Source: Macrostomum lignano (taxonomy: Eukaryota). From it: a stretch of DNA of 33,126 nucleotides. Of this stretch, positions 10,444 through 33,126 are shown one piece after another. The translations under genes and the position numbers were made by a program. The notes under the pieces were generated by a model. That model ran no database searches and was not told where the DNA came from. It worked only from the letters and a program-made list of their open reading frames with translations. The stretch is from positions 1 through 33,126 of the forward strand of contig NIVC01004856.1 of NCBI GenBank assembly GCA_002269645.1, given 5' to 3'. Every line of letters starts with the position of its first letter. Position 1 is the first letter of the stretch.

Positions 10444-10444
10444 T

Positions 10445-14429: not shown

Positions 14430-14476
14430 AAATGCCGAAGCTTTTCGTCCTAAGCGGACATCGTCAGGGTCGATTT
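14430..14476 (-). ncRNA. Minimal type I hammerhead ribozyme
   Basis: Minus strand: AAAUCGACC CUGACGA U GUCC-GCUUA-GGAC GAAA AGCU UC / GGCAUUU. Conserved CUGANGA and GAAA boxes, 4-bp stem II, palindromic mini stem III, UUC cleavage triplet (cleavage after 14437). Confidence 0.7.
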
Positions 14477-14741
14477 ATTGAAAAACGAAAACACAGGTGT
14501 TTAAAAGTAGGTTGTTGTACATTGTGAGTTAAAGTCCGATGGACAGGTCAAAAGGCGAACCATGATCAAGAGGTTGGAGAGGAACGCACACACAGCGCAG
14601 AGAGAGAGCGTGCCTCATACGTCAGAACACTTGGAGCTGTTGGCTTGCACCGTTCCCCGCTAATTGGACATTAAGGTTTGGCTTGAGGGCCTTGATGTAC
14701 AAGGCTTCAAGAATGGTCAGTTTGTAATCTTGCCTTTTATT
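14430..14741 (-). mobile_element. 3' fragment of a Penelope-like retroelement (GIY-YIG C-terminus + pLTR)
   Basis: Minus 14741-14622 translates NKRQDYKLTILEALYIKALKPNLNVQLAGNGASQQLQVF*, the typical PLE LxILEALYIxxxKPxLN tail, followed by AATAAA and a hammerhead core. Confidence 0.8.
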
Positions 14742-14834
14742 ACGCTTAGTATAGTTACATAGAAGGTAGTTATATAGCAAAGCTATATAACAGCAAAGCT
14801 ATATAACTACTTGCTATATAACTATACTAAGCGT
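14742..14834. repeat. Palindromic mini-element, arms of about 37 bp (ACGCTTAGTATAGTTA...TAACTATACTAAGCGT)
   Basis: Outer 16 bp perfectly inverted; further inverted TAGTTATATAGC/GCTATATAACTA inside. Confidence 0.7.
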
Positions 14835-15472
14835 CTATTTCTGCAGTGTAGCGTAGATCCTCCCTATTAAATTGGACTATCGAGCCTAATTAAACTGAAA
14901 GAACATGCTCTTAGAACACGGAGCATGCGCCGATTAGCCTATGATGCGCTCCTCGTGCATGCTCAGAAATCGTTTCCTCAAAATTGAAAACTGACTTCTG
15001 TACTACTGTACAAAACACAACTGAGATTTATATTATCAGGAAGAAGACTTCCAGGCGCGTCATCTGAAATAAGTTTTTTAACTCGCTAAATCATATAGAA
15101 CCGCAAAATTAGTCGAGTTAAATAATTGTCTTACTTTTTGTACAGGTTCAACATCTGAAGCAAACTCAACAAAACGTGCAAAAATGTGCGCTTTAATGTG
15201 GAGCTGCGTTCTTAAATGATTCGTTAAATAGACGCGTGAACATCATGCGAAAACAGTTCATTTAAAATTCGACGCCCTGTTTCTCAAAAATGTACCTATT
15301 GTTTTCATATGATCTTATGAGAAAGTAAAATTTATCTATTTGCCCTCATTTAAAGCCAACAAATCAAAAATCGTGTATTAGGATTCCTTATTTTCGAAGT
15401 TTAAAAATTGTACAGCATTTTTGCTCGTATACACCTTGTACAGGTACAAAGTACGCAATCCCGTGTACATAT

Positions 15473-15835
15473 TGTAGTATCCTTGCAAATAACGAACACT
15501 GCAGAGGCTCCGTGTAGTAGAGTTATAGTTGAAACGGATGTGCGCCGATAGCAAGCACTCGGCAGTAGATTTGTTTGAAGCGTGTATTTGTAGTAGTCTG
15601 GGCTAGCAATAGTAGCTGGAGGACCCCAAAGGAGTCTTGGTTATGACTGCGCGTGGAGTTTCTATTTATAGGCGGGAGCGCGAGGGAGAACTTTCCAGAA
15701 GGATACCATACATGGCACGCGCGCACACGAGAGAAGGGTCGAGAAGATTCTGGAATAAACAAATGAACTCACGCATTATAACAAATGAGGGAAGTTTCTA
15801 GAAACTTCCAGAATAATTGCACGATCGCCATAACA
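15473..15835 (-). mobile_element. Solo LTR (363 bp) with 5-bp TSD CATAT
   Basis: Minus strand starts TGTTAT and ends ACTACA; TATAAATA near 15670; CATAT at 15468-15472 and 15836-15840. Confidence 0.85.
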
Positions 15836-16806
15836 CATATCCTCAAGTGTCTAAGTGTCCCGTGTACATTACCTTGTTGGAAAGAGAATCTAGGTAGAAT
15901 CTAGTTTAATGCCACCAAGCTTCTGCTTGATCTTGCGCCGTTCAAAAGTTGTGCGTCAGTGTTGAAAATGGGTCGAAATGCAGGTGCAAAATTTTGAGGT
16001 TTTTTCAAACCCTGCTCGGCACGAGTATATCGTATAGGCGTCAAAGTATACCAAACCGTTACCACATATGCTGGCAACAATTATGCACGAACCACTAAGC
16101 TGCACCATAAAGGGTACAATTAATTGTTTGTTTGTGGCCAGCAAAGGAGTAAAAAAAGACACGTTTCTCGACCTTCAAGCCGGAAATATTCGATACAATG
16201 TATGTAAACAAACTAATACAAAAAGAACTATTTACGTAACACCTAAATGATTGCAAGGACATGCGTTGTGAAGCACAAAAAGTGTTACTTCTACATCAGG
16301 TAAGCCTTGAAAGTGCACCTTTAAAAAATGTACTTTTACAGTACACTTGTACTTTTGTACAACAGGTGTACGATTCGAAATTTTTATATCTTGATCAAAT
16401 AGCCCGCGGTGTCCTCATTGTACCCCTACAAGCTCAAATTCGACGTATTCGACCTTTTCGCTGCCCTGCAACAAACTAAAAAAATGAAAATTTTTGCAAC
16501 TTAAAAAATACATTTTTCACATTTTATACCGAAAAGTGCAAATGCACCAAAAATCATTATTGTGTCTAGACATCGCGGGCTATATCGTGAAAATAATCGT
16601 CAATGTGCTGCCCCGGAATAAGTAGTCTATGGCCGAATTTGTGCCAGGAAAGTAAACGGATATGTAACGTATATATCCGTTAAAAACAGATTTAACCATT
16701 GATGAACTATAGATCGATTGAACGTAGGTTTTGTCATTAATATTATTACCAAGAACACACTAAGCAATTCGTCCACTGCTTATAGCTATTCACCGCTTTC
16801 ATACAG

Positions 16807-18253
16807 TCACAAGAAGAAGCTAATTTTAGCACCATCCTTCTCCAAAGTTGCGATTGGGTTGCGCGACGGACCAGACTCGTTGGTCCCTGATTCACGGCGT
16901 TCGATTGCAAGCACCTTTGACGTAGTAGTCTCGTGGTGCAAACCTGCCGTGAGACTGCGAGAAACCTGGATCTTCCTTTTCTCAGAGATGCGTTTGGTGT
17001 ACCGGCCGACGGATTCATCGTGGCGATGGCCTACAAATAAGCGGGAGAATAAATCTAGAATCTTAAGTTATGTGAAATAGGATACATTTTTTCATATTTA
17101 GCGCGCTACTGACCTGTAACAGCCTTGATTTCTTCCATGGAATGACCAGCTTCAGCCAGGTTCGTCTCGGTCGTAGTTCTGACGCAATGGTTGGTGTAGA
17201 CGGCTCAGTCCGGCACGCTCAGAAATTTTCTTCATCATCTCGTTTAGCATGTTCGTGCCAAGAACGCAGGTTGAGGACTACCAATTTTCTGATCCAGGTT
17301 TGATCTTGAGAGGTTTCGGAAAAAGCACACTGACCTGCTGTGGAACCTTAGATAGGTACATCTCCACGGCTGCAACAGGGCATCGGGCATCGTCGGTTGC
17401 GAAAAGACGAAACTGTTTGCCGTCCGTCCAATCCCTCTCGGTGATTGTTTTCTCAGCTCCATCCTTGACCAGATCGACACACTTGACGCCGTTCTCTGAC
17501 GAGACAATCAGGTCTGACTTCTTCAGAGCTCGGATCGACTCTCTGCCACGGAAGCCAAAGTGGTACATAACCAAAAAGAAGATCTCGTCTTGAAGCTTCT
17601 GTGGATTACTTTTATCAAAGTACCCGCACAGCTTGTCCATATCGCTAGCGGTGATAGCCCGATACCCAAAGCTGTCGCCAATTGACCGCAGCATGCCGTT
17701 GTACGTTTGATTACTACGGCGAAATACGTCATCTCCGATCAAGTTTGTTCCACGAACATCCCGAAGGTAGCGATGAATACTCGCTCGAAAACAGCGCAAC
17801 CTGTCGGGAGCGTAATAGCGCTCGCCATCTTGATCAACAATCTTGAGGTTCACATACCACAGTCGCAAATAACTATCCACATACCGCAGCGGCATTATTT
17901 GTATAGATTTCATCCGGTAGATTTCTCCCCCGTAGAAACTCTTTCAGGCGAGAAACGTGCAGTTTTGTCTGGGCCACGGTTGCGGCAGATTTGAAGTCCT
18001 CCTCCACCTTTGAAATCAAGGCCAAATCAGCTTGATCCAGCTCCACCGGTGTTGTTTCCATGCTAGTGACCTCCTCGGAGTCTAGCTCAGTCGAAAATTT
18101 ATCCAGAAATTCACTGTCCTCCAGTGAAACTCCAGTGTATTGGTTGATTACGCCAGGCGCATCTAGGCTCATCGACAGCCGAGAGACGAACTCGTATTCC
18201 TGCCGTTCGAGCCCGGCGATTTCTCCCTCGGCAATTCTTGCTAAATTTATCAT
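16807..18253 (-). pseudogene. Crypton-like tyrosine recombinase (DUF3504-type) no. 1, with an 83-bp intron (17031-17113)
   Basis: GFRGRES (catalytic R), RCPV, YTNHCVR (HxxR), and spliced TG|HRHDESVGRY (H/Y). Frameshifts near 17900 and 17200, nonsense TAG at 17278-17280. Confidence 0.85.
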
Positions 18254-18743
18254 GTTGGCTTGCAAAGCGAGCAGAAGAACTGCAAAGACTTGAATGATTG
18301 TTAAATGAGAATGAAAATCAGAACTGAAAGAGCTCAGATAGCAGGATTCAGATTCTCGAAAAACTTGTCTATGGCTTCGCCCCCACACCCAATTTGTACT
18401 CAGCCTCGCAGCGGGCCGAAATGACGATTCGGCCCGGGAATTTTGTCTGCCTAAACCTGCCTAGCCCGGCATCTGGAGCGGGCCGAAATGAAATTATTAT
18501 GGCCCGCGAATTCGACACAATATAGATATTTCTACCCCATTTGGCCGCTCCATATATATCTATGGTTCAATGCAACAATCCTTTCTTTGGCCCGGCCAAA
18601 GAAACAGCGGTCCGGGCCAGAGAAATCAACTCAACAACAGTGTATTTATTATCAGAAAGTGATGTAATAAAACAACATTAACAATGCAATATTAAAGGAA
18701 GGAATTTTTTACGATGCTGTATTTTGTCACTTCAATCATTCAA

Positions 18744-19262
18744 TCATTCGAAATACGAGTAGATGCTCACTTTGTTTGTATCGCCACACACCTCCAGGCG
18801 CATTCTCTTCACCCTTGGTCGACCACTGCCAACGCCACCGTCCATCTCGTCTCCAGCCCCGGCCGGCTCGGTTTTTGCTGCACTTTCCGGTTTCGTTTCA
18901 GCAGCTGCAGATCCAGCTAGGATGGCGCTGAAAGTTTTCTCTTGACTCATTGAGATGCCAATGTAGCGCTCTAAAGCGTTGCTACTGTGCCCGGTCACAC
19001 GTGCTATGTCAGCTCGTTGCACGCCAGCCTCGTTCAGGGTGGTAGCGCAGGTCTTGCGTAGACTTTGATTCGTGTAGCGTGTACCATCACCAGGCGAAAC
19101 ATCGTTCACTAAAGTCTTGACAGTGTCAGCCAGGGTATGCCGTCTCATTGGCGTCCGCATAAACCACTCGGCGCGGCTGTCTGGCTTCCACTGACGATTG
19201 CATGACAAGATAAGAGCTTCATGGCACTCACGTGGCCGACGCGCGCAGTAGTCCGTGTACAC
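18744..19262 (-). pseudogene. Crypton-like tyrosine recombinase no. 2, C-terminal fragment
   Basis: WFMRTPMRRHTL, YTNQSLRKTCATTLNEAG, VTGHSSNALERY; cut off at its 5' side by a MITE. Confidence 0.8.
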
Positions 19263-19264
19263 AC

Positions 19265-19598
19265 AGACTAGAGTGTGACAAAAAACAGCTAGCCATTAGT
19301 TCGTTCCTAAGCTGTTGGATTGCTTGGCAAACCGGAAGTCAATCGATGCCGACTAATAGGGGGCCTATTGAATTGTCATCCTCAGAGATCTCAGATGTGT
19401 TAAGCCGATAAGAGGTCTCTGCTGGTAGCTCGTTTGCTATTACAGACGACGAAGGCCCTGAATTGTGAGCATAATTCCCAAGCATCTCTTAAAGTATTCA
19501 AAGTGGTGACATACGAATTTACTTAAAATTATGAGGACACTGAATGTTAGGAACGATCATTCCAATGGCTAGCTGTTTTTTGTGTCACACTCTAGTCT
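19265..19598. mobile_element. MITE-like element with inverted termini of about 33 bp
   Basis: AGACTAGAGTGTGACAAAAAACAGCTAGCCATT versus the reverse complement of AATGGCTAGCTGTTTTTTGTGTCACACTCTAGTCT; TSD ambiguous (TA or CTAG). Confidence 0.75.
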
Positions 19599-19784: not shown

Positions 19785-20450
19785 CGAGGGGTGTACTGAA
19801 AGTTTTGAGATGCAACAAAACCAAAAGTTTCTGAGGCAAAATTTCTGTCACAATTTTTAAAAGTAGTTGCCACCAACTTGCACACATTTCTTTATCCGGT
19901 GAAACCACCGTGTCCATGCTCCAGCCCACTGTTCTTCAGGCACTGCTGAAACCACCCGCTCGAACTCGATTCTTGCTGCTTCAGGGCTCTCAAACCGAGT
20001 CCCACGAAATTGGTTCTTCACCAAAGGGAAGAGAAAGAAGTCGCAGGGTGCCAGGTCGGGCAAATATGCAGGATGCGTCACCAGCCGGACTCCATTCTTG
20101 GCCAGAAATGCCAATGTTGCAGCAGCCGTTTGCGCACTGGCATTGTCGTGGTGCAGCAGCAGGCCACGGTGCGCGGCCGGCGTCTGCGCCAAGCATCGAA
20201 CACCAGCGGCAGGCACTGGTTGATATACCAGCCGGCATTGACTGTACGCCTGTCCTGGAGCGCTACAGTCGCCAGGTGGCTAGCCTGGCTGAAGAAAGTC
20301 GCCACCATCTGGTTCCCGACGCTGCGGGCTCGCCTGATCTTTGTTGGACTGGCATCATCCGGAAGGAGCCAAACTGCCGACAGCTGCTTGGTTTCTGGGT
20401 CGCACTGGTAGACCCAGGTCTCGTCCATCGTAGCAATTCTAATCTGTTCA
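19785..20450 (-). mobile_element. Mariner DD34D transposon, 5'-truncated, frameshifted
   Basis: DETWV, HHDNAS...HPAYLPDLAPCDFFLFP (34 residues between D2 and D3); 3' TIR TA|CGAGGGGTGTACTGAA at 19783-19800. Confidence 0.9.
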
Positions 20451-20791
20451 CTTAGAGATTCTGCTTTTCATTCAGCTATTTATTTTCATGACAATATGCT
20501 CTCTATTTTCAACTTTATCTTTTCGTATTAGTAGCATGATATGGTTGTTCCTTAATGTAAACGAGAAAAAAGCTAAAGAATTACGCAACTTGGCGGATAA
20601 TGACAAATAAAAACCCAGAAAATCATACTATAAATGTATTTACTTAAAGTTTTTCAATGACTCCCGCGGTTGAACATTAAACCTTTAGTACTTAATTAAC
20701 ACGGCAGCAGAGCATTTTTTAAATAACACAATAGCGCAACCTTGTCTAAAAAACACAGAAGAGCACACTAAACAGTAGTGGCCACTATTAA

Positions 20792-22267
20792 CAGTAGGAA
20801 TACCAAGCCATTTTTCCGCCCGTCGAACTACCAAGGGGGGGGAAATTTCCCCCCCCCCTGACAATTTTTTTTGCTGCGCCGGAACGGAGCAACGCAGGCA
20901 CACGAAATTCAAGAACACGGGCTAACTTTTTGTTGCGCACCTTCTCAAACAAGAATCAAGTCGCCAGCCCTCCGGACCGTCGAGATATTCGACGATTCTG
21001 CCAGAAGGTCGGATTTTTCCCATAAGCGCTAGTGTATTCAGTACACCCCTGTGCGCCAATTAGCACTGCGCCTCAGTGCAGCCTTGCCAAGTCTCCAAAT
21101 TTCATCAGCACGTCGACCACATGTGTCTGCATTAGTTCTGACTTCGTTGGTCACTAGCCTTCACCCAGGTGGAGCTTCTGGACCCTCAACAGCTGTGGCA
21201 CCAGGTGACTATGGACACCCTGATGCGGATTTCTCTAGTTTCGCCGATCAAGCCTCGACAGTGGGCAAGAATCAGCCGCCAGACATTCTCAGCTAGTCTC
21301 TCAAGCATTCCGTCATCATTCCGACGCCGTCGGCTCCTTCAACAGATTACACCAGGTGACTATGGACAGCCTGATAAGAATTTCTCTAGTTTCGCTGATC
21401 AAGCCTCGACAGTGGGCAAAAATCAACTGCTGGACATCCTCAGCTAGTCATTCAAGCATTCAGCCATCACCCCGACGCCGTCGGCACCTTCAACAGGTGG
21501 CACCAGGTGACTATGAAGATCCTGTTGGAACTATGTCAGATTTTTCTTATCAAGCTTCAATAATGGGCAAACCTCAACCGATGGACATTGTCAGCTAGTT
21601 TCTCGAGCATTCCGTCATCACCCCGATGCCGTCGGCACCTTCAACAGATTACACCAGGTGACTATGGACACCCTGATGCTGATTTCTCTAGTTTCGCCGA
21701 TCAAGCCTCGACAGTGGGCAAGCCTCAACTTCTGAAAACCCTCAGCTAGTCTCTCGAGCCTTCCGTCACCACCCTGACGCCGTCAGCACCTTCAACAGGT
21801 GGCACCAGGTGACTACGGACATCCTGTTGCAAATATGTTAGATTTTTCTTATCAAGCTTCAATAATGGGCAAACCTCAACCGATGGACATTGTGAAGGCT
21901 GATGGACACCGATGGACACCTGGGTGAAGGCTAGTGACCAACGAAGTCAGAACTAACGCAGACACATGTGGTCGACGTGCTGATGAAATTTGGAGACTTG
22001 GCAAGGCTGCACTGAGGCGCAGTGCTAATTGGCGCACATGGGTGTACTGAATACACTAGCGCTTATGGGAAAAATCCGACCTTCTGGCAGAATCGTCGAA
22101 TATCTCGACGGTCCGGAGGGCTGGCGACTTGATTCTTGTTTGAGAAGGTGCGCAACAAAAAGTTAGCCCGTGTTCTTGAATTTCGTGTGCCTGCGTTGCT
22201 CCGTTCCGGCGCAGCAAAAAAAATTGTCAGGGGGGGGAAATTTCCCCCCCCCTTGGTAGTTCTACTG
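20792..22267. mobile_element. TTAA-flanked foldback element with long inverted arms and an internal satellite
   Basis: TTAA|CAGTAG...CTACTG|TTAA (TTAA at 20788-20791 and 22268-22271); arms 20825-21171 and 21917-22262 are reverse complements with about 2 substitutions plus homopolymer-length differences; no transposase seen. Confidence 0.75.
21180..21900 (+). repeat. 151-bp tandem repeat, about 5 units, with an alternating (about 302-bp) pattern
   Basis: CCAGGTGAC at 21201, 21352, 21503, 21654, 21805; units alternate GTGGCACCAGG and ATTACACCAGG. Confidence 0.92.
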
Positions 22268-22271
22268 TTAA

Positions 22272-23170
22272 GCCGAGAAAAACTCGCCGACCACACAGTG
22301 AGAACGTCTTCTTCTAGAAGCACAGTTTCCCTGTCTTCATAGACCTGAACGTCATAGAAGTCCGCAGCATTAGTCTGAACCTGTGGGCCTACATGTCTCC
22401 TATCGTTCCCGTCCTGATTTCGTGGATTGCACTTTGTCCGTTTTGATTCAGTCTTTCTGGCTTGCCTCCCTTGTTGGACGTGCCCATCATTCTTTATTCT
22501 CGGTTTCTTTGCTGACGGTGCCCGCGCGTACGAACAGACAAAAAACGATGCAAAAACGGTGTAAAACGTTGGACTTCTTTTAAAAATCTCAGTGACAAAT
22601 GCAGGATCTTCTGTTCCTTGCCGTCGTTTCCGATTTGCTATACCGTATAAGTATGGCAGGCCGTTCGGCGTGTGATTTTGAACCGTCAAAAGATTCAAAG
22701 TTCGTTTGTACTTTATCCGAACGAAATCAGGTAGGGAGATTCGTTAGCGTTTGTCTGCTGAGACAGTTCGTTCTTTACTAGTTGAAAATTATTTTCAGCT
22801 GTAACGTTAGAGTACCAAGACTTCACTTATGTAATGTTTGTGTAATACTCTACAATGAAGGGGTGCCAGTGGCAGCCATCGTTCGATTAGGAACGAGAGT
22901 AGAGCCTTTGAATAATCATTATTCTTGACGTGCTCTTGTAAACACTCTGGTGAGGAGGCATGGAACTTTTCAAAGAGGTGATTGTCTACGCAATGAGTTA
23001 ACTGTTCGCTCATCATCTGGGTAGAATGTGCAGCGGCTGGTCGAAGCATCGTCATCGCCCAAAACGGTCTCGGTGTCAGGCAAGAAATTTCAGTTAGAAA
23101 CGTTGTCCACGAGCTACATCCGTGTTCAGGAACTGAATGTTTGGAGCCAAACAATGCGATAACTTGCTTC
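22272..23170 (-). pseudogene. MULE/NOF-FB-like transposase remnant, 3' part
   Basis: KNNDYSKALLSFLIERWLPLAPL and SNVTAENNFQLVKNEL resemble the Mutator C-terminal TNxxxExxFxxxK motif; continues across the P-element TSD from 26491. Confidence 0.45.
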
Positions 23171-23637: not shown

Positions 23638-26272
23638 TCACAACTTCTTGAGCTTGCGGTTAGCAATAGCGCGATCTCTTTCCTTCCGCACAGTCTCCAT
23701 CTTCTCTCGGCACCACTGATGCAATCGCATGTGCACAAAAAGCCTTGCCGCTTGTGCATTGCTTTCGGCTCGATGTTCGATACAAAATGGAAGCTGCACA
23801 CCAACTCGCTCAAATCTGCCGAGGATTCTTGCCCCAATGGCATCAGCAGCTGCTGCTGTTGCCATTTCTCGACGAAAAATCTTCTCCATCTTGCAGAATA
23901 TCGCAACACATGCGCTCGACGGCTAAGTAAGGCCGTATCGAGAATCTTCAAAGTTTTTGTGGGTGAAGGTTCGAGCAGGTGACTCGTCTGTTACCAACTC
24001 ATCCTTACAGCTGTTGCATGCAAAAATTTGCAGCTTCCGAAAAATCCATCCTCCGATGTAAGGGACTACTTCAGTAGCCTCCACATTGTCAAATGCAATT
24101 TCTGTTGCAACGTCTCCATCTGCAGAAACTGCCCGATGCTGCTGGGGCTGCTCTGCAGCTGAAGTTGATGCAGCCGTGACCTTCTCACGTAAGTCACGAA
24201 TCTCAACTGCCATGGCATCACCATCGTCCTCACAGTTTGTGCCGTTCGCAAGCTTGCGTTCCATTTTGCCAGCACTGATGGATCGAAGTGCACCGAGAAA
24301 CGCATGCAGTTCGGCTTCTCGTTGAAGCCATTGCGGCCTCTCACCATGGAGAAAAAATTCTGCAGCAGAAACAAGAAGGCATGAACACTATATGTAACAA
24401 CTGAAAACCATTTTCAGGCAGATACTCACCTCAACATGATCCTGGGAAAAGCGTCGAAGGCACAAATACGACACACCAGCTTCCCTTAGGCCGAAGTGAA
24501 TGATGCGCTTCGCTGACTCGATAGAAAGCAGCCAGCCTTCTTTAAACGGCATGGTTGTCTTGCTCCTTCCACCTCTCACAGGCGAGAATCGCCATGTCAA
24601 AATGAATTCTTGCGCTGCTGATAGCTGGCTCAGTACCGTCTCAGCGGACTCTTCGGTAACTGCACCTTTTCCATGCTTGCCGAATAAACTAGCAGAGTTG
24701 AGAATGTCAAACATCTCGTTTACTTTCTCCACAAACTCAGCTGTCTGCAGAGCGGACTTCTCCATTCGATCATGATCAACCAGAACTCGCATGCCACTCG
24801 CAACGGAATGGCTGAAAACCTGCGCCGCCAGCGAGACTTTCATTTTCTGCGCGATGCCGGGACAGAAATGCGCATCTGTCAGTTTTACCGCCAGCTTCAA
24901 CTCTCGTCTGCGCTCAGACTCGTAGAATTCACGCAGGTGTCGCCAGGTGGCCCGCTTGTTGCCATTATACTCGATGTCGTGCTTAAGCAGGCAGTTTCTC
25001 GTATTTTTCAAGCAGTGAGGAACGTCCAGTATGAAGTACACGGGCTCGCCTGTAGTATGGATGTGGAAAGCTTGGCTGCGACAAGGAGACCGTCTTCCTG
25101 ATGTGAGCCCACTGTGTAGGCTCTTAATCAGTCACCACTGCCTTCACACAAATTTCTGCTTCATTAGCGGCCTTCAGGCATTCGTTGATGGCAGCCTTGA
25201 ATTCCGGCTGTTTTTGGCCGTGGTTGACTAAGTAGCAGGCGATGGGCTGTTTCCACGGGGCCACGATGCCTCGCAGTTGTGCAACAATGGCCTGATTCAC
25301 CGGCTTTGCATCTTCCAACGCCTCGAATCCTGAAGCCAGTCCAATAATTGCATCGCTATTCTTGTCAAACCTGACTGATGGAGAGATGCGCATTCCGTCC
25401 AGGCAGAGCGTAGCGATCTTTTCATCCCTAGACTTTCGTGAAAAGCAGGTCTTCAGTTCAGCGATGGTGAAGCTGCAGACTCCGGTATCCGAAAAAAATA
25501 ATCGAATTCTGCGCTTCAGAACTGTTTCGGATGAAAGCAGAAGGCCTGATTGCCTGCGTAGGAACCGATAAGCAGCAGGACTCAAGTGGTGAATCACAAT
25601 GGCTTCTCGCACCTGCTTGCGATTCCAGCGCATACCGCGATTTCGAATTCGGCGTGTTGCAACTGTCTGCTGTTCAGAAGTGGCAGTTGAAGCTCTTTGA
25701 AGCTTCTGCTTTAATCTTTTGATGACTCCATCTCGATATCGAGCTCTATCCCGCTGTTTCTTCCGCTCCTTTCGAATTTCGTTGCGGTTGTTTGTTGCCC
25801 TGTCTTCTGAACCAGTTTTATTCTGAGCGTCGGCTAGCATTGCGTGTAGCTCAGGCATCTCGACAGCATACGTATCTTCACAATGCAGAACTGGTGGATA
25901 CATGTTGTCAGCAATGTGGTCTGGTCGTGGCTCGACTTCAACCGATTCCTTCTCCAAGCGTGGTGGAAAAGTGTAGGGATTTGGAAGGGCATCTTTTCTA
26001 AGTCGAGCTGAACGTCGTTCGTGTAGTGGGCAGGAGTAATCGGTTTCTTTAAAATGCAGACTGCACACTTTCAGCCTCCGCTGCCGCACAAAATTTAAGT
26101 CAACATCGCGTAATTCAAGTATCTCTATCCAACGAACTGCTACCTGGTCATCGCTTGGAAATTTGTGTAGATGGACTGCAAATCCATGCACTGAAGCTGG
26201 AGTGTCCTCTGTAGTATAGCAGGCAGCTGCACAACAAGCGTGGCTACTAAGACGATTGATGATCAGCTCCAT
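23638..26272 (-). pseudogene. THAP + P-element transposase (THAP9-like), with a 70-bp intron (24360-24429)
   Basis: THAP CCAAAC...KFP...W...VCSLHF; CLDGM, WKQPIA, VVTD, DVPHCLKNTRN, QKMKVSLAAQVFS, spliced SQDHVE|NFFS, YIGG..C..C. Nonsense codons at 25124 and 23923, frameshifts near 25060 and 24290. Confidence 0.93.
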
Positions 26273-26490
26273 GGCTTACGTGCGAAGCAGCAGCTCACAG
26301 CCAGCGAGTTTTGAGCTCGCGATAGATTTATCAAATAAATTATTAAATGCAGAGTGCTGCGCTGGCAGCAGACAACTGACTGTCTATGGGCAAAACGCTG
26401 GGTTTTCGCGGCAGACGGCTGGCGGACGCAGTTTCCATTGCAAATTCGATGAGTGACCAATCTAGGTAATATAGAATCTGTGGCTACGGT

Positions 26491-26935
26491 CACCAAGTCT
26501 TAATATTTTTCTAGGCACATCAAGTAGACAAAACATCGAATAAATAATTATGAATTCTTGGACACTGAATTCTGTGCCAGAGCGAAGATTTCTACTTACT
26601 GCGCCTATAATGTGGTTCGAGAAAGCAAAAGGGATTGTTGACAAGCGTCCGGCTGCACCGTTTTTAACGATGTCAAATAAATGCCGTAGAACGTCGGAAA
26701 TGGACATTTAAGTGAACACAAGGCAGACGCAGTGAATCATCGCCTATGAAAAATCAGTCATAGCCATGCCGACTTTCATAGCCATTCATAAAATTGTTAG
26801 AATCTGTCGCTTCTTGTGCGGCGTTAACAAGACAAGCGTAGAAAATACTCCTTCCAGGTGGAAGCGTAAATCCACTTTCACATCTAAGCCGTTCTACGCC
26901 TTCTCTTTTTCTTCGGCAGTGCTGCGGCGACATCT
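26491..26935 (-). pseudogene. MULE/NOF-FB-like transposase remnant, 5' part
   Basis: GRSIFYACLV, then TDFS*AMIHCVCLVFT*MSISDVLRHLFDIV...SNHIIGAVSRNL, resembling the Mutator xDFSxALxxA...CxxH region. Confidence 0.45.
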
Positions 26936-26939
26936 CGAA

Positions 26940-27257
26940 AAGAGGTATATAGTGGTTGGTGGAGCATCTGTGCAATCAGCAAGCTGGCGGACTGTCATGC
27001 GAGCATCTTCATCCAGAAGTGCCTTGATGCGAGAGGCCAGTTCTTTGTTAAATGGATTCTTTGGGCGACCAGAGCGAGGGTGATCGCCAAGTTCCCCCTG
27101 GCCTCTAAGCCTTCAATCCAGTTGCGCACAGTGCGGATACTAACAGCGTGGTTCTGATAAGCAGCCACTAGTCTTCATGAATCTTGGTGGGATTCAGGTG
27201 ATTCTTCCACAAGATAAAAGCTGCTGCTCGCTGGGCCTCAGCGCTATGAGCATCCAT
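26940..27257 (-). pseudogene. Mariner transposase N-terminal (HTH) fragment
   Basis: PTKIHED/VAAYQNHAVSIRTVRNWIEG.../DHPRSGRP...LLDEDARMTVRQLA, with two frameshifts; catalytic domain absent. Confidence 0.8.
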
Positions 27258-27299: not shown

Positions 27300-28980
27300 C
27301 CTTTTTGCAATCAATTTCGTCGTTTTTGCGTTCAATTTCGACACGAGCGCTAGTGTGCAGTCTAAAAAACTGAGCCATAGACACTGGGCAACTTTTGCGT
27401 TCAAATTCGGCCGTGTTGCATTCTATTTCGGCAGCTTACGGCATCAGACATTCTCCATTTGAAATTACAGAAACTAGCCTCGCCGCTACAAAATAACCAT
27501 GGATACGCATGAACAATAAAGGACAATACAAATAAGAAACAACTAGACTTGAACAGTCAATTAGAAACAAATTTTAGTCCACAGAGTCTACAGAGTTTCG
27601 TTGGGTCGCATCACTTAAGCCAAAATATCCTTGGCATCCAGGCAACGCTGCACGTACGTCTGGCCGTGGTTCACCCATTGCAGACACTTGAACGGTGTAA
27701 TGTCCTGCGCTGCAATGCGCACCAAGCGTTGCAGCAGCCGAAGTCGATGTTGCTGCAGTGAGATGAACGCTGCTTGTGCAGCGGTCTGATCGCTGGCCTC
27801 CCGCTGCACCGCAGGCGACGAGAGAGCGCGCTTCAGCGCTGCCTTCAGGCATGAGCCTGCCTGCTCAGCGGCATTCAGGAATGGTGAATACGGGGGCAGA
27901 AACCGGCACTCATGACCTTCACCCAATCCTGGCACGTTCAGGTGCGCACGAGCGCCATCAACCATGAGCACGAATTCCTCCTCCTCTAACAGGACGTCCA
28001 ACTCGGTTAGAAAGTCTGCGAAATGGGCGTTGGTGAAGCCTCCCTGTATAGTGGTCAGGTGAATCAGGCCGTACACAGGCGAGATGACCAGGCAGATGGT
28101 TAGGTTCTGCCCTCGCTGGCCATTCAAAACCGAGACGGCACGCTGGCCTCGTGGAGCCCAGCCCTGACTGCGGAGTGTCCACAGATTGACACCGAACTTG
28201 TCAAGCCAGATCGTGTGGCGATGGACGCCTTCGGCCAGCATCCACTCAGCATGCATGCAGCGGGCCTCCTTGGTCACGGGAGTGTTCCAATCCACTGGAT
28301 TCCCTCTCATGAGCTTGAGAGTGATGAGTCTTCCATCCAGTACGCGGCTGATGGCAGACACTGACACATTCACTAGATTGGGGAATCCCTGCAGGATGTG
28401 GTTCCTCATCTGCGCCAGTGTTGCGCCAGGTTGGGTCTCCAGGAATTCGGTGATCGCATTCACCATCTCATCTGTCAAGCGACGCCTCTTTGCTCCGCCT
28501 TTTGGAAGAGGGTCCGCTCTGCCCTGGTCAGCGTAGGCTTTGATAATGCTTGCCGCAGTTTGGCGCGCAAAGCCCAGCACACGAGCGAGCGCTCGCCAGT
28601 CTGCATTGAAGTCGTAAGCTGCGATCAGTCTCTGTCGATCAACTGTCGTGACGCGCGTGTATTGTCCTCTTGGAGGCATTCTAGCCGGGAGCAGAAAGTA
28701 AAAACACCGAAACAGACTTGCGGAGACGACTATAGGCCTGCTTTCGGAGACAAATTTTTCATCCCACCCTCACTGAACGCGATCGAGTGAGAAAGTGTCT
28801 ATGGCAAAAACATTCGAACTGTGCCCACAGTGCCCATGTGATTGCGCTGCCGAAATAGGACGCAAAAAGGCCGAATTTGAACGCAAAAGTTGTCCAGTGT
28901 CTATGGCTCAGTTGTTTGGACTGCACACTAGCGCTCGCGCCGAAATTGAACGCAAAAACGACGAAATTGATTGCAAAAGG
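27300..28980 (-). mobile_element. IS630/Tc1-mariner superfamily element with TIRs of about 136 bp and TA TSD
   Basis: TA|CCTTTT(T)GCAATCAATTTCGTCG... at both ends (27300-27435, 28846-28980), internal TTTTGCGTTCAA repeats, TA at 27298-27299 and 28981-28982. Confidence 0.92.
27615..28679 (-). CDS. IS630-like DDE transposase, 354 aa, uninterrupted ORF, DD30E spacing
   Basis: N-terminal HTH, GGAKRRRLT linker, WLDKFG (D1), MVDGARAH (D2), FLPPYSPFLNAAE (E). Confidence 0.9.
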   Translation of the reverse strand: MPPRGQYTRVTTVDRQRLIAAYDFNADWRALARVLGFARQTAASIIKAYADQGRADPLPKGGAKRRRLTDEMVNAITEFLETQPGATLAQMRNHILQGFPNLVNVSVSAISRVLDGRLITLKLMRGNPVDWNTPVTKEARCMHAEWMLAEGVHRHTIWLDKFGVNLWTLRSQGWAPRGQRAVSVLNGQRGQNLTICLVISPVYGLIHLTTIQGGFTNAHFADFLTELDVLLEEEEFVLMVDGARAHLNVPGLGEGHECRFLPPYSPFLNAAEQAGSCLKAALKRALSSPAVQREASDQTAAQAAFISLQQHRLRLLQRLVRIAAQDITPFKCLQWVNHGQTYVQRCLDAKDILA

Positions 28981-29490: not shown

Positions 29491-30650
29491 CTAATTATTG
29501 ATCACCACACTGCAGTTCGTCAGATGAAATTGAATTGAGACTTCTCCACTGCCGGATTGTTCTTGAGCTGCTCGCCGCACCTGCCGACCGTCGATTACTG
29601 CGGAGCAGTCCTGAAGTTGTATGTCACTTGTTTGTTTGTACTGACGCACGCCGACGATGCTTCTGTGACCAGTTGTCTCCATGATAAGTTGCTCATCGAC
29701 TCCAGCGCGGTACAGTCTCGTGGCACAAGACGCTCGCAGGCTGTTATTGCGTTTGTTACCCTGAATGCCGGACTCCTCACACAGACGTTTCACCATGGTC
29801 GACAGGGTGTTCTTACCAAGTGGACGCTTGGTATACCAGCATTTCGCACTATGATTGCGAATCGCCTGTAGGTAGAACCGACTGATGTCGGTCGGGCGCA
29901 CGCTAATAAACTTCTTACAACAACAACAACAACTAAAATACGCTGTCAGTGGAAAAAGGCAGCGTCACAGTGCACGCTTCATAGCCTTGGCGCGAACAAA
30001 GGCCGCACCGCCGGCAGTGTCCGGGGCGCCAGGATCGGCCAGCAGGCAGTCGACGAAATGCCGAGTTCGGGCCGGTAGGGTGCCTGCAGCGTTAGCAGCA
30101 GCACCTCCTGCACCGGCTGCGGGCAGTAGGACTCGGCGCAGATGATGTGGCCTGCCAGCTGGAGTCGCCGAAGTCGCAACTTCTTGAAGAGTGCAACATT
30201 ATGCGACTGGGGTCAGCCACGTCAGGAAAGTGTACAACCTCTTTGGGAGTAACACGCTTGTCCTTCAGGCCTCGAGTAAAGGTCTTAGAATTTCTTTCTA
30301 GGTAAATTAAGCACTCGGAACCGTCCCTGATTTCCACACGAAATTGTTCCACAGTGAGATTACAATGCTCATCGCGGCCCCGTAGAGCAAAATGTAGACC
30401 GTTGAGATAGAACAGGGTTCGAGTCAGTTGGTCAGGTGTTTTGTCACCTAGTTGTTGCTCCCTGAGTTGAGCCATTTGACTCCTCTGCTGCCGCTGCTCC
30501 AATTATTCTGGCGATGTCATGGTGGCTGCGAAGGTCACCACCAGCATTTAACACAGTGTCGATGTCAGATTGAAGCAATACATTGGGATCGAATCCACCC
30601 ATGAAATCATCGGTATAGTCAACTAGCGGATTTGTAATACGTGAATTCAT
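29491..30650 (-). pseudogene. Crypton-like tyrosine recombinase no. 3, internally deleted and interrupted by a LINE tail
   Basis: GLHFALRGRDEH, YLERNSKT..GLK, WYTKRPLGKNTL, RNNSLRASCATRLYRAGVDEQLIMETTGHRSIVGVRQY; LFKK|FISVRP is restored when the insert is removed. Confidence 0.88.
29917..30177 (-). mobile_element. 5'-truncated non-LTR retrotransposon (RTE-like) 3' end with (GTT)n tail and 8-bp TSD
   Basis: RLRRLQLAGHII.AESYCPQP (RRLxxAGH LINE C-terminal motif); tail at 29917-29933; TSD AACTTCTT at 29909-29916 and 30178-30185. Confidence 0.85.
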
Positions 30651-30689
30651 TGTCCAGAAGACACAGCCTGGCGTAATGACAAACTCAAC

Positions 30690-31017
30690 TGGCCATTATT
30701 TCAGCTGCATCTCGTCAGCTCAAGCCTATCATCAGCTTATTCATTTATAGTCTATGGCCCAACAGCTTTTTTATTTATAGTCTATGGCCCAACCACCGCC
30801 CTCTTTACGCAGTCGCACGCACGCAGACTCTTACCCTGAAATAATGACCGCTTCCGGCACGCTGAAATAATGGCCAGGCTGTGTTTTATAGACAATGACG
30901 TTGCGTAGTAGGTAAGGGGCTGAAATAATGACCAAACACGAGTGCTGATCCAAACACGAGTGCGCGTAGCGCACGAGTGTCTATGGCCATTATTTCAGCC
31001 CATTACCTACTACGCAA
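30690..31017. repeat. Cluster of CTGAAATAATG motifs and a 33-bp inverted repeat upstream of recombinase no. 3
   Basis: Five copies in both orientations; arms 30901-30933 / 30985-31017 with 2 mismatches. Confidence 0.75.
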
Positions 31018-31578
31018 TCTACCATTGCTGCAGAATAGGGCACACGCTGTAGAATAAAAATGGCTGTTAGTTTGATGGCTGATATAGCCTTCGTCTTCAA
31101 CAGACAGCAGCAGAAGAAGCAGCAGCTTTGTCCATAGACGACATCAAAATTTTCCGGGAATTATTTACTTGAAGCCCGTAAATTCAATGAGGCATCACCA
31201 TGCTCTATAAGAGATAAAGCACGCTTTTCCGGGCACTATTTTTTAATGCCCGAGAGCCGAAGGCCGAGAATCGAGAGCCGGGTGCCAACATTTGGTGGGG
31301 TAATTCAAGGCGGGTGTGGCGTCCCCCCAGTCCATGGACTGAACAGCCGAAAGGCTCGAGGGTGGTTGACTAAGAATATATTTTAAATTATTAATTCCAT
31401 TTACTTTATGTAAAGATTTTCTGAGTTTTTTTACTTTTTAAGTTGTTTATTATACAAGGAAAATTTTCTTAAATGCCAGTTTTCAGTGCTTGTAAAAGCC
31501 AGACGGAAGGCTAATTGAAAGTCAAGTGATATATGTAAATATCTTATTCTTTACAGCAAATAAAAAACTTCAAAAGTA

Positions 31579-32880
31579 CGAGGGGTGTTGCAAAACTTTC
31601 CGGACTGTGTTTTCTGTGAACGACGAGAATGTCCAAATGAGCTGAATTTTAGTCACAACTCCTTGCACATCTGCCCTATTGAAAGGTAGAAGGGCAAAAC
31701 GATTCGAAATGCTGATCAAAACTTCAAACGATTTTAAACATGGACCCAAGAACCTTACAGTACGATTTGGAAATTCAGATTGTCACTCGCTATCGCTGTC
31801 GCTGGTGTTCTCGGAAGTGTCACGCAGCTTGGGGATTGGCTCGCTCTACATATTCGCGTTCCATGGAAACGCACTTTTGGTAGCGCTCAACAATGAGCTT
31901 CGTGAAGCCAGCCTCCCAGAAGGTTGAATCCAGCTGACGCAGAGATTCGTTGGCAGCATTGATGACCTGCTCGCACGTTGTGAAGACTTGGCCTCGCATC
32001 GGCATCTTCATAGGGCCAAACAAAGTCGGCGCTGGTAAGGTCGGGACTGTAGGCTGGGTGCTTCAGTTGGCGGAAGCCAAGCTCCTCCACCTTGGCCTGT
32101 GTGCAAGCAGCAGCATGCGGCCGCACATTGTCCCACAGGATGAATGGCTGCTGGCCCATGATGCGTCGCTTGCTCAGAATCGCAGTGCGCAGACGGTTGA
32201 GCTGGTCGATGATGTAATTAGAATTGATTTTCTGGCCCTGTGGCAGGTAGTCGACTAGCAGCACACTGCAAGCGTCCAACCAGACGGTGCACATTACGTT
32301 TTGCGTCCATGCTGACTTCATGGCCTTTATGTGTGGATGGCGACCTTTGGGACCCCATTGCATCGACTGCTGCTTTGTCCGCGGATTGAACATTGGCAGG
32401 GGCGTTTCGTCGATGGTTATGACCAGCTCCTTGAACCTGCTGTCACCAATGTCGTTCCACAATGCCCAGTTCTCAAGAGAACACTGCACGCGCGCTCTTT
32501 TGTGCTCTGCAGTCATGCGACTCACATATGAATAGTGGATGCCACACACATTCCCAATTTCACGCACACATGCCGATGAATTGTCCTTCAGATATTCGAG
32601 GACAGCAACCGCGTTGCCTTCATCCGTGCTGGTGCGTGCTGGATGGACAGAACGAGGGCATCAGCAACGTTGGTGGCACCACCATTGGCAAGACGATGGT
32701 GTTCGAAAACTTGCGTCCGACCCAATGCGTGATCACCGAATGCAGTAACCACTTCGTTGAAGGTTTCCGTTGCCGTTTTTTCCTGCTGTTGACATGCGAA
32801 AATGTTCGTACAGAAGTTCGTACAGCTACAGCACACGCGATTCTGAACAATGATTTGTGCACAACGAATTGGCGCAAAAA
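31579..32880 (-). mobile_element. Mariner DD34D transposon, degenerate
   Basis: TATETFNEVVTAFGDHAL (HTH), TIDETP, WDNVRPH...HPAYSPDLTSAD (34 spacing); 3' TIR TA|CGAGGGGTGTTGCAAAAC; several frameshifts; 5' TIR not identified. Confidence 0.9.
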
Positions 32881-33126
32881 ATGTCAGAAAGTGTTCGCAA
32901 CGATTTTTTTAAACACAACACGGATCTGAAAGTGCCACGAGCTAACGTTTTAACAACGTGCACGCGGGACAAGGTGACCAAAAGGACTACTGAATTGGGT
33001 AATGGTTAAACGGTTTACGATTCACAATACGATTGACTAAAATGCACAATTTAGCGACTGAAACAGTTCAAGCATGACACTACTGCGAGCAATAATTAAT
33101 TTTTTTTATCACGAGAAAGGTGACGA

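What the first reader, a model, noticed from the sequence alone, without database searches (positions are those of the whole stretch)
14430..33126. All 12 orientable transposons lie on the same (minus) strand: candidate unistrand piRNA cluster or TE trap
The PLE, solo LTR, three Crypton-like recombinases, three mariners, MULE-like remnant, P element, IS630-like element and LINE tail all read on minus. With independent random orientation, 12 of 12 gives P of about 0.0005; counting the plus-strand BEL upstream (12 of 13) gives about 0.003, although the boundary was chosen after inspection. Strong co-orientation of diverse TE fragments is the known signature of flamenco-type clusters. A plus-strand transcript (PRKDC read-through or the BEL LTR promoter at 10158-10443) would be antisense to every element.
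Basis: partly seen in the sequence, partly recalled or inferred. Interest (0 to 1): 0.72.

Follow-up and report, generated by a model that had tools for sequence, protein, structure and literature searches.

The report
Same-strand transposon pile-up beside PRKDC
Downstream of a DNA-repair kinase gene lies a transposon-rich stretch in which every recognisable transposon gene points the same way, but only 7-8 of the 12 claimed elements can be verified, the run is not rare genome-wide, and nothing in the sequence shows that it makes piRNAs.

Summary
The co-orientation is real but weaker than claimed. A symmetric Pfam scan of both strands of 12.1-33.0 kb found transposase or recombinase domains only on the minus strand. 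They are three Crypton-like tyrosine recombinases, two mariners, one P element, one intact Tc1/IS630-like element with TIRs and a TA duplication, and one short HTH remnant. That makes 7 credible elements plus 1 weak one.

The claimed PLE, solo LTR, MULE-like remnant and LINE tail have no support from Pfam, Rfam or a 1.84-billion-protein search. A 1.4-kb foldback element is symmetric and cannot be oriented.

The copies are unrelated families (24-46% amino-acid identity), so they are independent insertions. The statistics become P = 0.008-0.016 rather than 0.0005. Allowing for the boundary chosen after inspection, with the plus-strand BEL, gives 0.012-0.04. About 390 runs this long are expected among 100,000 randomly oriented insertions.

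PRKDC ends at 5493, so the field is not in its intron. Flamenco hallmarks are absent or untestable: there are no Gypsy/LTR fragments, poly(A) signals are not depleted on the plus strand, and only 18.7 kb is visible.

Best reading: an ordinary transposon accumulation zone with chance or weakly selected co-orientation. A piRNA cluster remains possible (about 0.15) and needs small-RNA data.

The parts
2925..5496 (+). Last exons of a PRKDC (DNA-PKcs) orthologue: kinase exons at about 2925-3270 and 3750-4427, the FATC exon at about 5080-5493, and a TGA stop at 5494-5496. The introns are GT-AG.
   Evidence: Pfam PI3_PI4_kinase E=2.2e-34 and 9.9e-7, and FATC E=2.7e-7. PDB DNA-PKcs residues 3792-4016, E=1.5e-40, against ATM at 3.6e-21. 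DNA-PKcs residues 4034-4126 of 4128. Splice sites and the stop codon read directly.
10158..12258 (+). 5' fragment of a BEL/Pao-like LTR retrotransposon. The LTR spans about 10158-10444, with TATAAA at 10346-10351, AATAAA at 10362-10367 and a TGG primer-binding-like site at 10445. The gag-like ORF is truncated at 12258. This is the only plus-strand TE-coding remnant in the window.
   Evidence: Pfam DUF1759 E=1.9e-6, 28.4 bits, above the 25.4 cut-off. LTR features read. The 439-aa ORF itself found no homologues, so the family call rests on DUF1759.
12248..12290 (-). 43-nt inverted copy of the BEL LTR start, abutting the truncation point.
   Evidence: Inverted repeat I6, 95% complementary; sequence.
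14625..14798 (-). 58-aa ORF that by eye resembles the end of a GIY-YIG (Penelope-like) endonuclease. It is unverified.
   Evidence: No Pfam hit at E<=10 or in the six-frame scan. No hammerhead ribozyme in Rfam. The resemblance is from memory only.
16810..18460 (-). Crypton-like element A. The tyrosine recombinase is spread over three frames: 17876-18460, 17281-17943 and 16810-17067.
   Evidence: Pfam DUF3504 E=4.3e-5 at 17329-17628, 24.1 bits, below the 29.7 cut-off. 30% identical over 43 aa to Crypton C. No RT domain nearby.
18747..19295 (-). Crypton-like fragment B: the C-terminal half of a tyrosine recombinase, 5'-truncated.
   Evidence: Pfam Phage_integrase E=5e-5 at 18978-19229. 29% identical over 106 aa to the Crypton C C-terminus, E=1e-10.
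19860..20467 (-). Mariner A: DDE catalytic domain with one frameshift. The N-terminal DNA-binding part is missing.
   Evidence: PDB SETMAR E=1.9e-13 and Mos1 residues 241-344. No Pfam hit at E<=0.01.
20822..22265 (.). Foldback-type non-autonomous element. Its 350-nt terminal inverted repeats are 98% identical and enclose 4.6 copies of a 151-bp tandem repeat. It is symmetric and cannot be oriented.
   Evidence: (I1, I7).
22810..23304 (-). Its identity is unknown.
   Evidence: 0 hits among 1.84e9 representative proteins. No Pfam hit. AlphaFold pLDDT 35.7, unusable.
23641..26275 (-). P element (THAP9-like transposase), nearly full-length coding region in five ORF pieces. The breaks are frameshifts or short introns. 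No TIRs were found.
   Evidence: Pfam THAP 9.9e-10, TNP-like RNaseH_N 3.5e-18, GBD 5.4e-24 and RNaseH_C 3e-6. PDB P transposase 6p5a, E=4.3e-11. The TIR search was negative.
26757..27174 (-). Short helix-turn-helix remnant of a Tc1/mariner/IS630-type transposase N-terminus. This is a weak call.
   Evidence: Pfam HTH_32 E=4.4e-5, 24.4 bits, below the 33.7 cut-off. No mariner match in PDB. Marginal match to the N-terminus of an IS630-like relative.
27300..28980 (-). Complete Tc1/IS630-like element: about 135-nt TIRs, flanking TA duplication, intact 354-aa transposase ORF (27618-28679) with D160, D241 and E272 conserved.
   Evidence: Pfam DDE_3 1.2e-15 and HTH_32 1e-6. TIRs 93% identical. TA|CCTTTT...AAAAGG|TA. 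Relatives are at most 56% identical. Catalytic triad from alignment.
29494..30502 (-). Crypton-like element C: tyrosine recombinase in two ORFs, 30095-30502 and 29494-29964.
   Evidence: Pfam DUF3504 1.2e-15 (58.4 bits) and Phage_integrase 7.9e-12 (45.7 bits), both above their cut-offs.
31573..32908 (-). Mariner B, near full length but with several frameshifts. It has an N-terminal HTH-like ORF, a DDE ORF at 31890-32660 and a C-terminal ORF.
   Evidence: Pfam Transposase_1 3e-12 and DDE_3 3.8e-6. PDB SETMAR 8.4e-15 and Mos1 residues 146-285.

Best explanation
The stretch from about 14.4 kb to the window end is an ordinary transposon accumulation zone in the gene-poor DNA 3' of PRKDC. It was built by at least seven independent insertions of unrelated, mostly decayed DNA-transposon families: three Cryptons, two mariners, one P element, one still-intact Tc1/IS630-like element and an HTH remnant. 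A symmetric foldback element and about 5 kb of unclassifiable sequence lie among them.

All recognisable transposase and recombinase genes point toward PRKDC (minus strand). I read this co-orientation as a chance run, of the kind expected hundreds of times per TE-rich genome and likely to surface in a scan of many windows. No dedicated function is demonstrated.

Shown: the element identities, their orientation and their independence. Inferred: that chance is the cause.
For: - Only 7 credible elements plus 1 weak one can be verified, not 12. Four claimed elements have no support.
- Two-sided P is 0.0078-0.016. Allowing for the post-hoc boundary and the adjacent plus-strand BEL gives 0.012-0.039.
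- About 390 same-strand runs of at least 8 are expected among 1e5 randomly oriented insertions; simulation gave 396.
- The elements are cut-and-paste or recombinase DNA transposons. No insertion-orientation mechanism is known for these (my own knowledge), and they are the class least subject to orientation selection in transcribed DNA (PMC1391917).
- There is no transcription footprint on the plus strand. Poly(A) hexamers number 22 on plus and 15 on minus, and G+T is 0.494.
- No host-gene domain was found on either strand of the field.
Against: Within this one window the run is still nominally significant, with 8/8 on minus and zero on plus after a symmetric scan. An illustrative Bayes sketch leaves 7-26% for a strongly biased piRNA-type locus and 31-43% for a weakly biased ordinary transcription unit; the priors are my own assumptions. 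The genome-wide run-length distribution for this organism could not be measured because the source genome is not in any collection I could reach. About 5 kb of the field is unannotated and could hold further elements of either orientation.
Confidence: 0.6

Rival explanations
1. The field is a unistrand piRNA source locus. A plus-strand Pol II transcript starts at the BEL LTR promoter or another upstream promoter, or arises from PRKDC read-through. It runs antisense through all the captured transposons and is processed into antisense piRNAs. Selection for antisense captures creates the strand bias.
For: - All 7-8 orientable elements are antisense to the plus strand and none is sense.
- Five superfamilies are represented, from fragments to one intact copy, as expected of a trap.
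- A plus-oriented LTR with TATAAA at 10346 lies upstream.
- D. melanogaster flamenco has 79% of its TEs antisense (PMC10495008), which would give about 0.15 for 8/8, against 0.004-0.008 by chance.
- Antisense TE insertions in host transcripts are known to seed piRNAs (PMC13226689, abstract).
Against: - In flam-like loci the bias is carried exclusively by Gypsy elements and is absent for other classes (PMC10643416). Here there is no Gypsy or other LTR coding fragment in the field, and the only LTR-type element is sense to the proposed precursor.
- The visible length is 18.7 kb, against 227-1085 kb.
- There are 22 AATAAA/ATTAAA hexamers on the plus strand of the field and 13 more between PRKDC and the field.
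- The BEL LTR carries its own AATAAA at 10362, and the BEL is followed by an inverted LTR end.
- The organism is unidentified, so even the presence of a PIWI pathway is inferred only from the animal-type TE set (THAP, BEL gag, DUF3504 Cryptons).
Confidence: 0.15
2. The field lies inside an ordinary plus-strand transcription unit: a long intron or extended 3' region of a gene outside the window, or a lncRNA. Sense-oriented insertions were removed by selection because they bring poly(A) and splice signals. This is the general 'transcription footprint' of antisense TE bias.
For: Antisense orientation bias of TEs within transcribed regions is well documented and has been used to predict transcripts (PMC1391917, PMC3517506, PMC1794541). 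The field is antisense to the neighbouring PRKDC gene's strand.
Against: - PRKDC itself ends at 5493, so the field is not in its intron.
- Neither poly(A)-signal depletion on plus nor G+T skew is seen.
- No exon-like Pfam domain was found on the plus strand of 12-33 kb.
Confidence: 0.2
3. The co-orientation is mechanistic or non-independent. Some 'elements' are pieces of one copy split by nested insertions; for example, the HTH remnant at 26.8-27.2 kb could be the missing N-terminus of mariner A at 19.9-20.5 kb. Alternatively, the Cryptons integrated site-specifically in a fixed orientation. Either way the number of independent events is smaller than it looks.
For: Mariner A lacks its N-terminal domain, and the HTH remnant lacks a catalytic domain and lies upstream on the same strand. 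Three Cryptons within 14 kb is a striking local density.
Against: - The Crypton copies are only about 30% identical to each other and the mariners 24-46%. There is no DNA similarity between copies, so they are different old families, not duplicates.
- No shared TIRs link the two candidate mariner halves.
- The joined pieces would make an element of about 2.1 kb, too long for a mariner.
- Merging them removes only one event (7 instead of 8).
Confidence: 0.05

Closest known systems
flamenco and flam-like unistrand piRNA clusters of Drosophila (PMC10643416, PMC10495008)
   Same: TE-dense locus next to a protein-coding gene. It has a strong strand bias of TE fragments from several families, and a possible upstream Pol II promoter oriented so that the transcript would be antisense to the TEs.
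   Different: Flam-like loci are 227-1085 kb, are enriched in Gypsy/Ty3 endogenous retroviruses, and owe their strand bias to those elements alone. They are defined by unistrand piRNAs, a conserved promoter and somatic expression. Here 18.7 kb is visible, the content is DNA transposons only, the single LTR-type element is in the opposite orientation, and no expression or small-RNA evidence exists.
Genic or read-through piRNA sources created by antisense TE insertions into host transcripts (PMC13226689, abstract)
   Different: The first verified TE lies more than 11 kb beyond the PRKDC stop codon. Between them are a 2.3-kb microsatellite, a sense-oriented BEL fragment and 13 plus-strand poly(A) hexamers. 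No transcript evidence exists.
Antisense TE orientation bias as a footprint of ordinary transcription units (ROAST/FEAST, PMC1391917; PMC3517506)
   Same: Unrelated TE families are co-oriented relative to one strand.
   Different: That bias is statistical (strongest for LTRs, weakest for DNA transposons) and comes with poly(A)-signal depletion and G+T skew on the sense strand. Neither is seen here.
TE nests or 'graveyards' in gene-poor DNA
   Same: High density of decayed copies from many families, some truncated next to one another, with an occasional young intact insertion (the Tc1/IS630-like element with a TA duplication, and the foldback with 98% identical arms).
   Different: Random orientation is the usual expectation. 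Here the orientable subset is uniformly on one strand.

Membership tests
flamenco-type unistrand piRNA cluster | Strong strand bias of transposon fragments over the locus | tested here: met
   7 credible and 1 weak TE coding remnants on minus and 0 on plus in 14.4-33.1 kb. P=0.008-0.016, or 0.012-0.04 with the post-hoc boundary.
flamenco-type unistrand piRNA cluster | Enrichment of Gypsy/Ty3 (LTR, env-bearing) elements, which carry the antisense bias (PMC10643416) | tested here: not met
   No RT, integrase, protease, gag or env Pfam domain on either strand of the field. The content is Crypton, mariner, P and Tc1-like. The only LTR-type element (BEL gag) lies outside the field on the opposite strand.
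flamenco-type unistrand piRNA cluster | Extent of hundreds of kilobases (227-1085 kb in PMC10643416; up to 350 kb in PMC10495008) | not testable with these tools
   The window ends at 33126 and the source contig could not be retrieved. Only 18.7 kb is visible.
flamenco-type unistrand piRNA cluster | Discrete Pol II promoter and a long single-stranded precursor transcript | not testable with these tools
   A candidate exists only as a sequence motif: the BEL LTR with TATAAA at 10346-10351, followed by its own AATAAA at 10362-10367. The promoter tool offered covers bacterial sigma-70 sites only.
flamenco-type unistrand piRNA cluster | Abundant 24-32-nt, 1U-biased small RNAs from one strand | not testable with these tools
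   No small-RNA data are available and the organism is unidentified.
Ordinary transcription unit (antisense TE footprint) | The region lies within an annotated or evident transcript on the strand opposite the TEs | tested here: not met
   For PRKDC this is not met. The FATC exon ends at 5493 with TGA and aligns to DNA-PKcs residues 4034-4126 of 4128. No plus-strand protein domain was found downstream. Other transcripts cannot be excluded.
Ordinary transcription unit (antisense TE footprint) | Depletion of poly(A) signals and G+T excess on the sense strand (PMC1391917) | tested here: not met
   AATAAA plus ATTAAA: 22 on plus and 15 on minus. G+T on plus is 0.494. The sample is small, so this is only weak evidence.
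Crypton (tyrosine-recombinase DNA transposon) | Tyrosine recombinase of the DUF3504/CryptonA type without an associated reverse transcriptase. DIRS and Ngaro recombinases do not match DUF3504 (PMC3212892). | tested here: met
   Element C: DUF3504 1.2e-15 and Phage_integrase 7.9e-12. Element A: DUF3504 4.3e-5. Element B: Phage_integrase 5e-5, plus E=1e-10 to C. No RT domain in the field. A and B are below Pfam's curated cut-offs. Element termini are not defined.
Tc1/mariner/IS630 superfamily | DDE/D transposase with an N-terminal HTH, terminal inverted repeats and a TA target duplication | tested here: met
   This holds in full for 27300-28980. For mariners A and B only the transposase homology is met; their TIRs were not found.
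P element / THAP9-like | THAP DNA-binding domain plus an RNase-H-like catalytic domain interrupted by a GTP-binding insertion domain; 31-bp TIRs and an 8-bp duplication | tested here: inconclusive
   All four protein domains are present in the right order. TIRs and the duplication were not found.
   No Pfam family at E<=1 in six frames of the unassigned segments, nor at E<=10 for candidate ORFs. No Rfam family. No homologue for the orphan ORF. The only homopolymer tail candidate is T8 at 33100-33107, at the window edge. A species-specific repeat library could still rescue some of these.

The most novel reading that the evidence does not exclude
The field is the proximal part of a unistrand piRNA cluster in an unidentified, probably invertebrate animal. 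It would trap DNA transposons (Crypton, mariner, P, Tc1-like) rather than endogenous retroviruses, and would be transcribed on the plus strand from an LTR-derived or other promoter between PRKDC and the field. That would be a flamenco-like architecture with a different cargo class.
Probability: 0.15. Interest if true: 0.5.

Novelty: already known. Interest (0 to 1): 0.25.

Why it matters
If the locus really were a unistrand piRNA source made only of DNA transposons, it would extend the flamenco principle (antisense capture in a single transcription unit) beyond retroviral elements and beyond Drosophila. It would also show that co-orientation alone can flag such loci in unannotated genomes.

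As it stands, the value is mainly methodological. Orientation runs read by eye overcount elements, since 4 of the 12 could not be verified. A run of 7-8 is expected hundreds of times per TE-rich genome. So strand runs in a single 20-kb window should not be promoted to piRNA-cluster candidates without a genome-wide null and small-RNA data.

The window does supply a clean annotation of several diverged TE families, including an apparently intact Tc1/IS630-like element.

Tried and rejected
I replaced this with typed pseudo-proteins in which stops become X.
- Retrieving the source contig to see beyond 33126 failed. Three window ORFs are not on record.
- Identifying the organism failed. The Tc1-like transposase has relatives of at most 56% identity, unnamed apart from a 41% Nematostella hit. 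The PRKDC kinase exon found only two weak hits through the word-indexed search. The BEL ORF found none. So the taxon stays unknown. An animal is inferred from the THAP, BEL-gag and DUF3504-Crypton content and from the GT-AG introns.
- The 'MULE-like remnant' could not be supported. The orphan ORF 22810-23304 was tested with Pfam, a full HMMER search of 1.84e9 proteins and AlphaFold (pLDDT 35.7; the first job was lost). I ran no fold search because the model is meaningless.
- The PLE could not be supported. There is no GIY-YIG, RT or hammerhead signal.
- TIR searches for the two mariners, the P element and a hypothetical split mariner (19.6 kb and 27.2 kb) found only chance-level matches.
- I rejected the idea that the Cryptons or mariners are local duplicates, because there is no DNA similarity and only 24-46% protein identity.
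- I rejected an intron-of-PRKDC explanation, because the gene ends at 5493.
- RIP or methylation decay of the TEs is not indicated; CpG o/e is about 0.95.

Full report
CONTEXT

The window is eukaryotic nuclear DNA. Its left end carries the last exons of a DNA-PKcs (PRKDC) orthologue on the plus strand.
- ORFs 2925-3365 and 3696-4505 hit Pfam PI3_PI4_kinase (E=9.9e-7 and 2.2e-34). ORF 5065-5493 hits FATC (E=2.7e-7).
- Against the PDB, the kinase exon aligns to human DNA-PKcs residues 3792-4016 (E=1.5e-40; the next PIKK, ATM, scores 3.6e-21).
- The last exon aligns to residues 4034-4126 of 4128.
- The introns are GT-AG, and the reading frame ends with TGA at 5494-5496.

So the gene stops at about 5.5 kb, and everything the finding concerns lies downstream of it, not in one of its introns. 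Between the gene and the field lie AT-rich DNA, a 2.3-kb (CTGT)n array at 7314-9631, and a 5' fragment of a BEL/Pao-like retrotransposon on the plus strand (gag-like DUF1759, E=1.9e-6). The BEL LTR starts at 10158, with TATAAA at 10346, AATAAA at 10362 and a TGG primer-binding-like site at 10445.

CHECKING THE OBSERVATION

To avoid looking harder at one strand, I extracted every stop-to-stop ORF of at least 50 aa on both strands. I joined them with X spacers and scanned them against Pfam.

The plus strand of 12.1-33.0 kb gave no family at E<=0.01. The minus strand gave the following, in window coordinates:
- Mariner B: Transposase_1/DDE_3 at 32016-32414.
- Crypton C: DUF3504 at 30257-30460 and Phage_integrase at 29629-29880.
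- A Tc1/IS630-like element: DDE_3 at 27828-28214 and HTH_32 at 28338-28559.
- A short HTH_32 remnant at 26972-27103.
- A P element: THAP at 25982-26236, TNP-like RNaseH_N at 25127-25486, GBD at 24667-25017 and RNaseH_C at 24297-24365.
- Crypton B: Phage_integrase at 18978-19229.
- Crypton A: DUF3504 at 17329-17628.

A second mariner (A, 19860-20467) missed Pfam but matches Mos1 residues 241-344 and SETMAR (E=1.9e-13). Mariner B matches Mos1 146-285. The P element matches the Drosophila P transposase.

The Tc1/IS630-like copy is complete. It has 135-nt TIRs at 93% identity, a flanking TA duplication, an intact 354-aa ORF and conserved D160/D241/E272.

A tblastn of the 40 related transposases I had fetched, run against the window, again hit only the minus strand.

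WHAT COULD NOT BE VERIFIED

- I scanned all six frames (stops as X) of the unassigned segments 14400-16800, 22266-23640 and 30500-31560. No Pfam family appeared at E<=1 on either strand.
- Candidate ORFs gave nothing relevant at E<=10.
- Rfam found no hammerhead or any other family, and there are no tRNA-like sequences.
- The only sizeable unexplained ORF, 22810-23304(-), has no homologue among 1.84 billion representative proteins. It also folds to an unusable model (pLDDT 35.7).
- The only homopolymer that could be a retroposon tail is a T8 run at 33100-33107, at the very edge of the window.

These four items may still be real, because a species-specific repeat library might recognise them. 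They cannot be counted now.

The element at 20822-22265 is a foldback with 98% identical 350-nt arms around 151-bp tandem repeats. It is symmetric, so it has no orientation.

The verified tally in 14.4-33.1 kb is therefore 7 credible elements plus 1 weak one (the HTH remnant), all on minus. Crypton A, Crypton B and the HTH remnant have E of about 5e-5 but fall below Pfam's curated cut-offs. Crypton B is independently supported by its similarity to Crypton C (E=1e-10). From the coordinates, recognisable TE sequence covers about 11.5 of 18.7 kb (about 61%).

INDEPENDENCE

The copies are not duplicates of one another.
- A self-comparison at DNA level finds no similarity between the Cryptons or between the mariners.
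- At protein level the Cryptons are about 30% identical and the mariners 24-46%.

One caveat remains. Mariner A lacks its N-terminal domain, and the HTH remnant, 6.4 kb upstream on the same strand, lacks a catalytic domain. They could be one copy split by nested insertions. No shared termini support this, and the joined length would be too great. If it were true, the count drops from 8 to 7.

STATISTICS

With the verified counts the numbers change.
- Two-sided P is 0.0078 for 8/8 and 0.016 for 7/7.
- The boundary was drawn after inspection and the next element upstream (BEL) is on plus. The fairer figures are P=0.012 for a run of at least 8 among 9 elements, P=0.023 for at least 7 among 8, and P=0.039 for 8 of 9 by the binomial test.
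- Among 100,000 randomly oriented insertions, about 390 runs of at least 8 are expected, and simulation gave 396. Even runs of at least 12 are expected about 24 times.

In a scan of many windows, a run like this is not an anomaly by itself.

TESTS BEARING ON THE piRNA OR TRANSCRIPTION READING

- Class of cargo. [quoted passage not shown] D. melanogaster flamenco has 79% of its TEs antisense, 85% of them Ty3/mdg4 (PMC10495008). Here no retroviral or LTR coding domain occurs in the field, the cargo is DNA transposons, and the only LTR-type element is sense to the proposed precursor.
- Transcription footprints. Transcribed regions show depletion of poly(A) signals and a G+T excess on the sense strand, and an antisense bias of TEs that is strongest for LTRs and weakest for DNA transposons (PMC1391917). 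The field has 22 AATAAA/ATTAAA hexamers on plus against 15 on minus, and G+T is 0.494. There is no footprint, although the sample is small.
- Read-through from PRKDC would have to cross 9 kb with 13 plus-strand poly(A) hexamers and the microsatellite.
- The BEL LTR does offer a plus-strand TATA box. However, it is followed by its own AATAAA, and the element is truncated at 12258 against an inverted copy of its own LTR start.

None of this excludes a piRNA source. It means that no positive sequence evidence exists beyond the strand run itself.

EXPLANATION AND RIVALS

My best reading (0.6) is an ordinary TE accumulation zone whose orientable members happen to share a strand.

The main rivals are these:
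- A weak antisense footprint of an unannotated plus-strand transcription unit (0.2).
- A genuine unistrand piRNA locus (0.15).
- Non-independence or mechanistic orientation (0.05).

An illustrative Bayes calculation used priors of my own choosing: 0.63 chance, 0.35 ordinary transcription unit and 0.02 piRNA cluster. The posterior for a cluster is 7-26%, depending on how strongly DNA transposons are assumed to be biased in such loci. I place it in the lower-middle of that range because the published bias is specific to Gypsy elements.

COMPARISON WITH THE KNOWN, AND NOVELTY

The locus resembles flamenco only in showing a strand bias next to a gene. It fails the one other defining feature that could be tested (Gypsy/LTR enrichment), and the remaining features are untestable here.

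The individual elements are new but unremarkable members of known superfamilies. DUF3504-type recombinases mark Cryptons rather than DIRS or Ngaro elements (PMC3212892). I therefore rate the finding as an already known kind of thing, a TE-rich intergenic region, with a modest chance of being a new member of the unistrand-cluster class.

LIMITS

- The organism and the flanking genome are unknown.
- About 5 kb of the field is unclassified.
- Orientation could be assigned only to elements with recognisable coding remnants.
- No expression or small-RNA data can be consulted.

The decisive experiments and computations are listed separately.

Noticed in passing
window 27300-28980: The Tc1/IS630-like element looks intact. 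It has a 354-aa ORF, about 135-nt TIRs at 93% identity and a TA duplication. The invariant D160/D241/E272 leave only 30 residues between the second D and the E, shorter than the classical DD34E spacing. The closest relatives are 56% identical and unnamed.
   Followed up: partly
window 20822-22265: Foldback-like element: 350-nt arms 98% identical, G8-AAATTT-C10 palindromes at both termini, and an interior made of 4.6 copies of a 151-bp tandem repeat. No clear target duplication. It looks like a recent insertion.
   Followed up: partly
window 3278-3715 and 4498-5058: The two introns flanking the PRKDC kinase exon each hold a 35-36-bp minisatellite. The two arrays are 65-72% similar in inverted orientation, so the exon sits between the arms of a large imperfect inverted repeat.
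   Followed up: no
window 971-1367: A degenerate TTAGGG-like (telomere-type) repeat array lies inside a PRKDC intron.
   Followed up: no
window 7314-9631 and 2553-2906: A 2.3-kb (CTGT)n microsatellite lies between PRKDC and the BEL fragment, and a (GTGA)n array of 354 bp lies in a PRKDC intron.
   Followed up: no
window 12248-12337: The BEL fragment is truncated at 12258 exactly where a 43-nt inverted copy of its own LTR start begins. A further 21-nt copy of that terminus follows at about 12317-12337. This suggests a head-to-head rearrangement of two copies.
   Followed up: no
window 22810-23304 (-): A 165-aa open reading frame has no detectable homologue among 1.84 billion proteins, no Pfam domain and no confident fold. 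It may be non-coding.
   Followed up: yes
window 16810-19295 and 29494-30502: Three mutually divergent (about 30% identity) Crypton-type recombinase remnants lie within 14 kb. That is an unusual local density for a generally rare transposon class.
   Followed up: partly
window 14430-33126 versus PRKDC exons: CpG observed/expected is about 0.95 across the TE field but 0.69-0.81 in PRKDC exons. The TEs show no methylation-type CpG decay and no RIP-like AT enrichment.
   Followed up: no
window 14742-14834, 30901-31017, 19265-19598, 6272-6644: There are two perfect-ish palindromes of 93 and 117 nt, and a small inverted-repeat pair bounding about 330 bp (MITE-like). Arrays of a 16-bp unit also occur in inverted arrangement downstream of PRKDC.
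   Followed up: no
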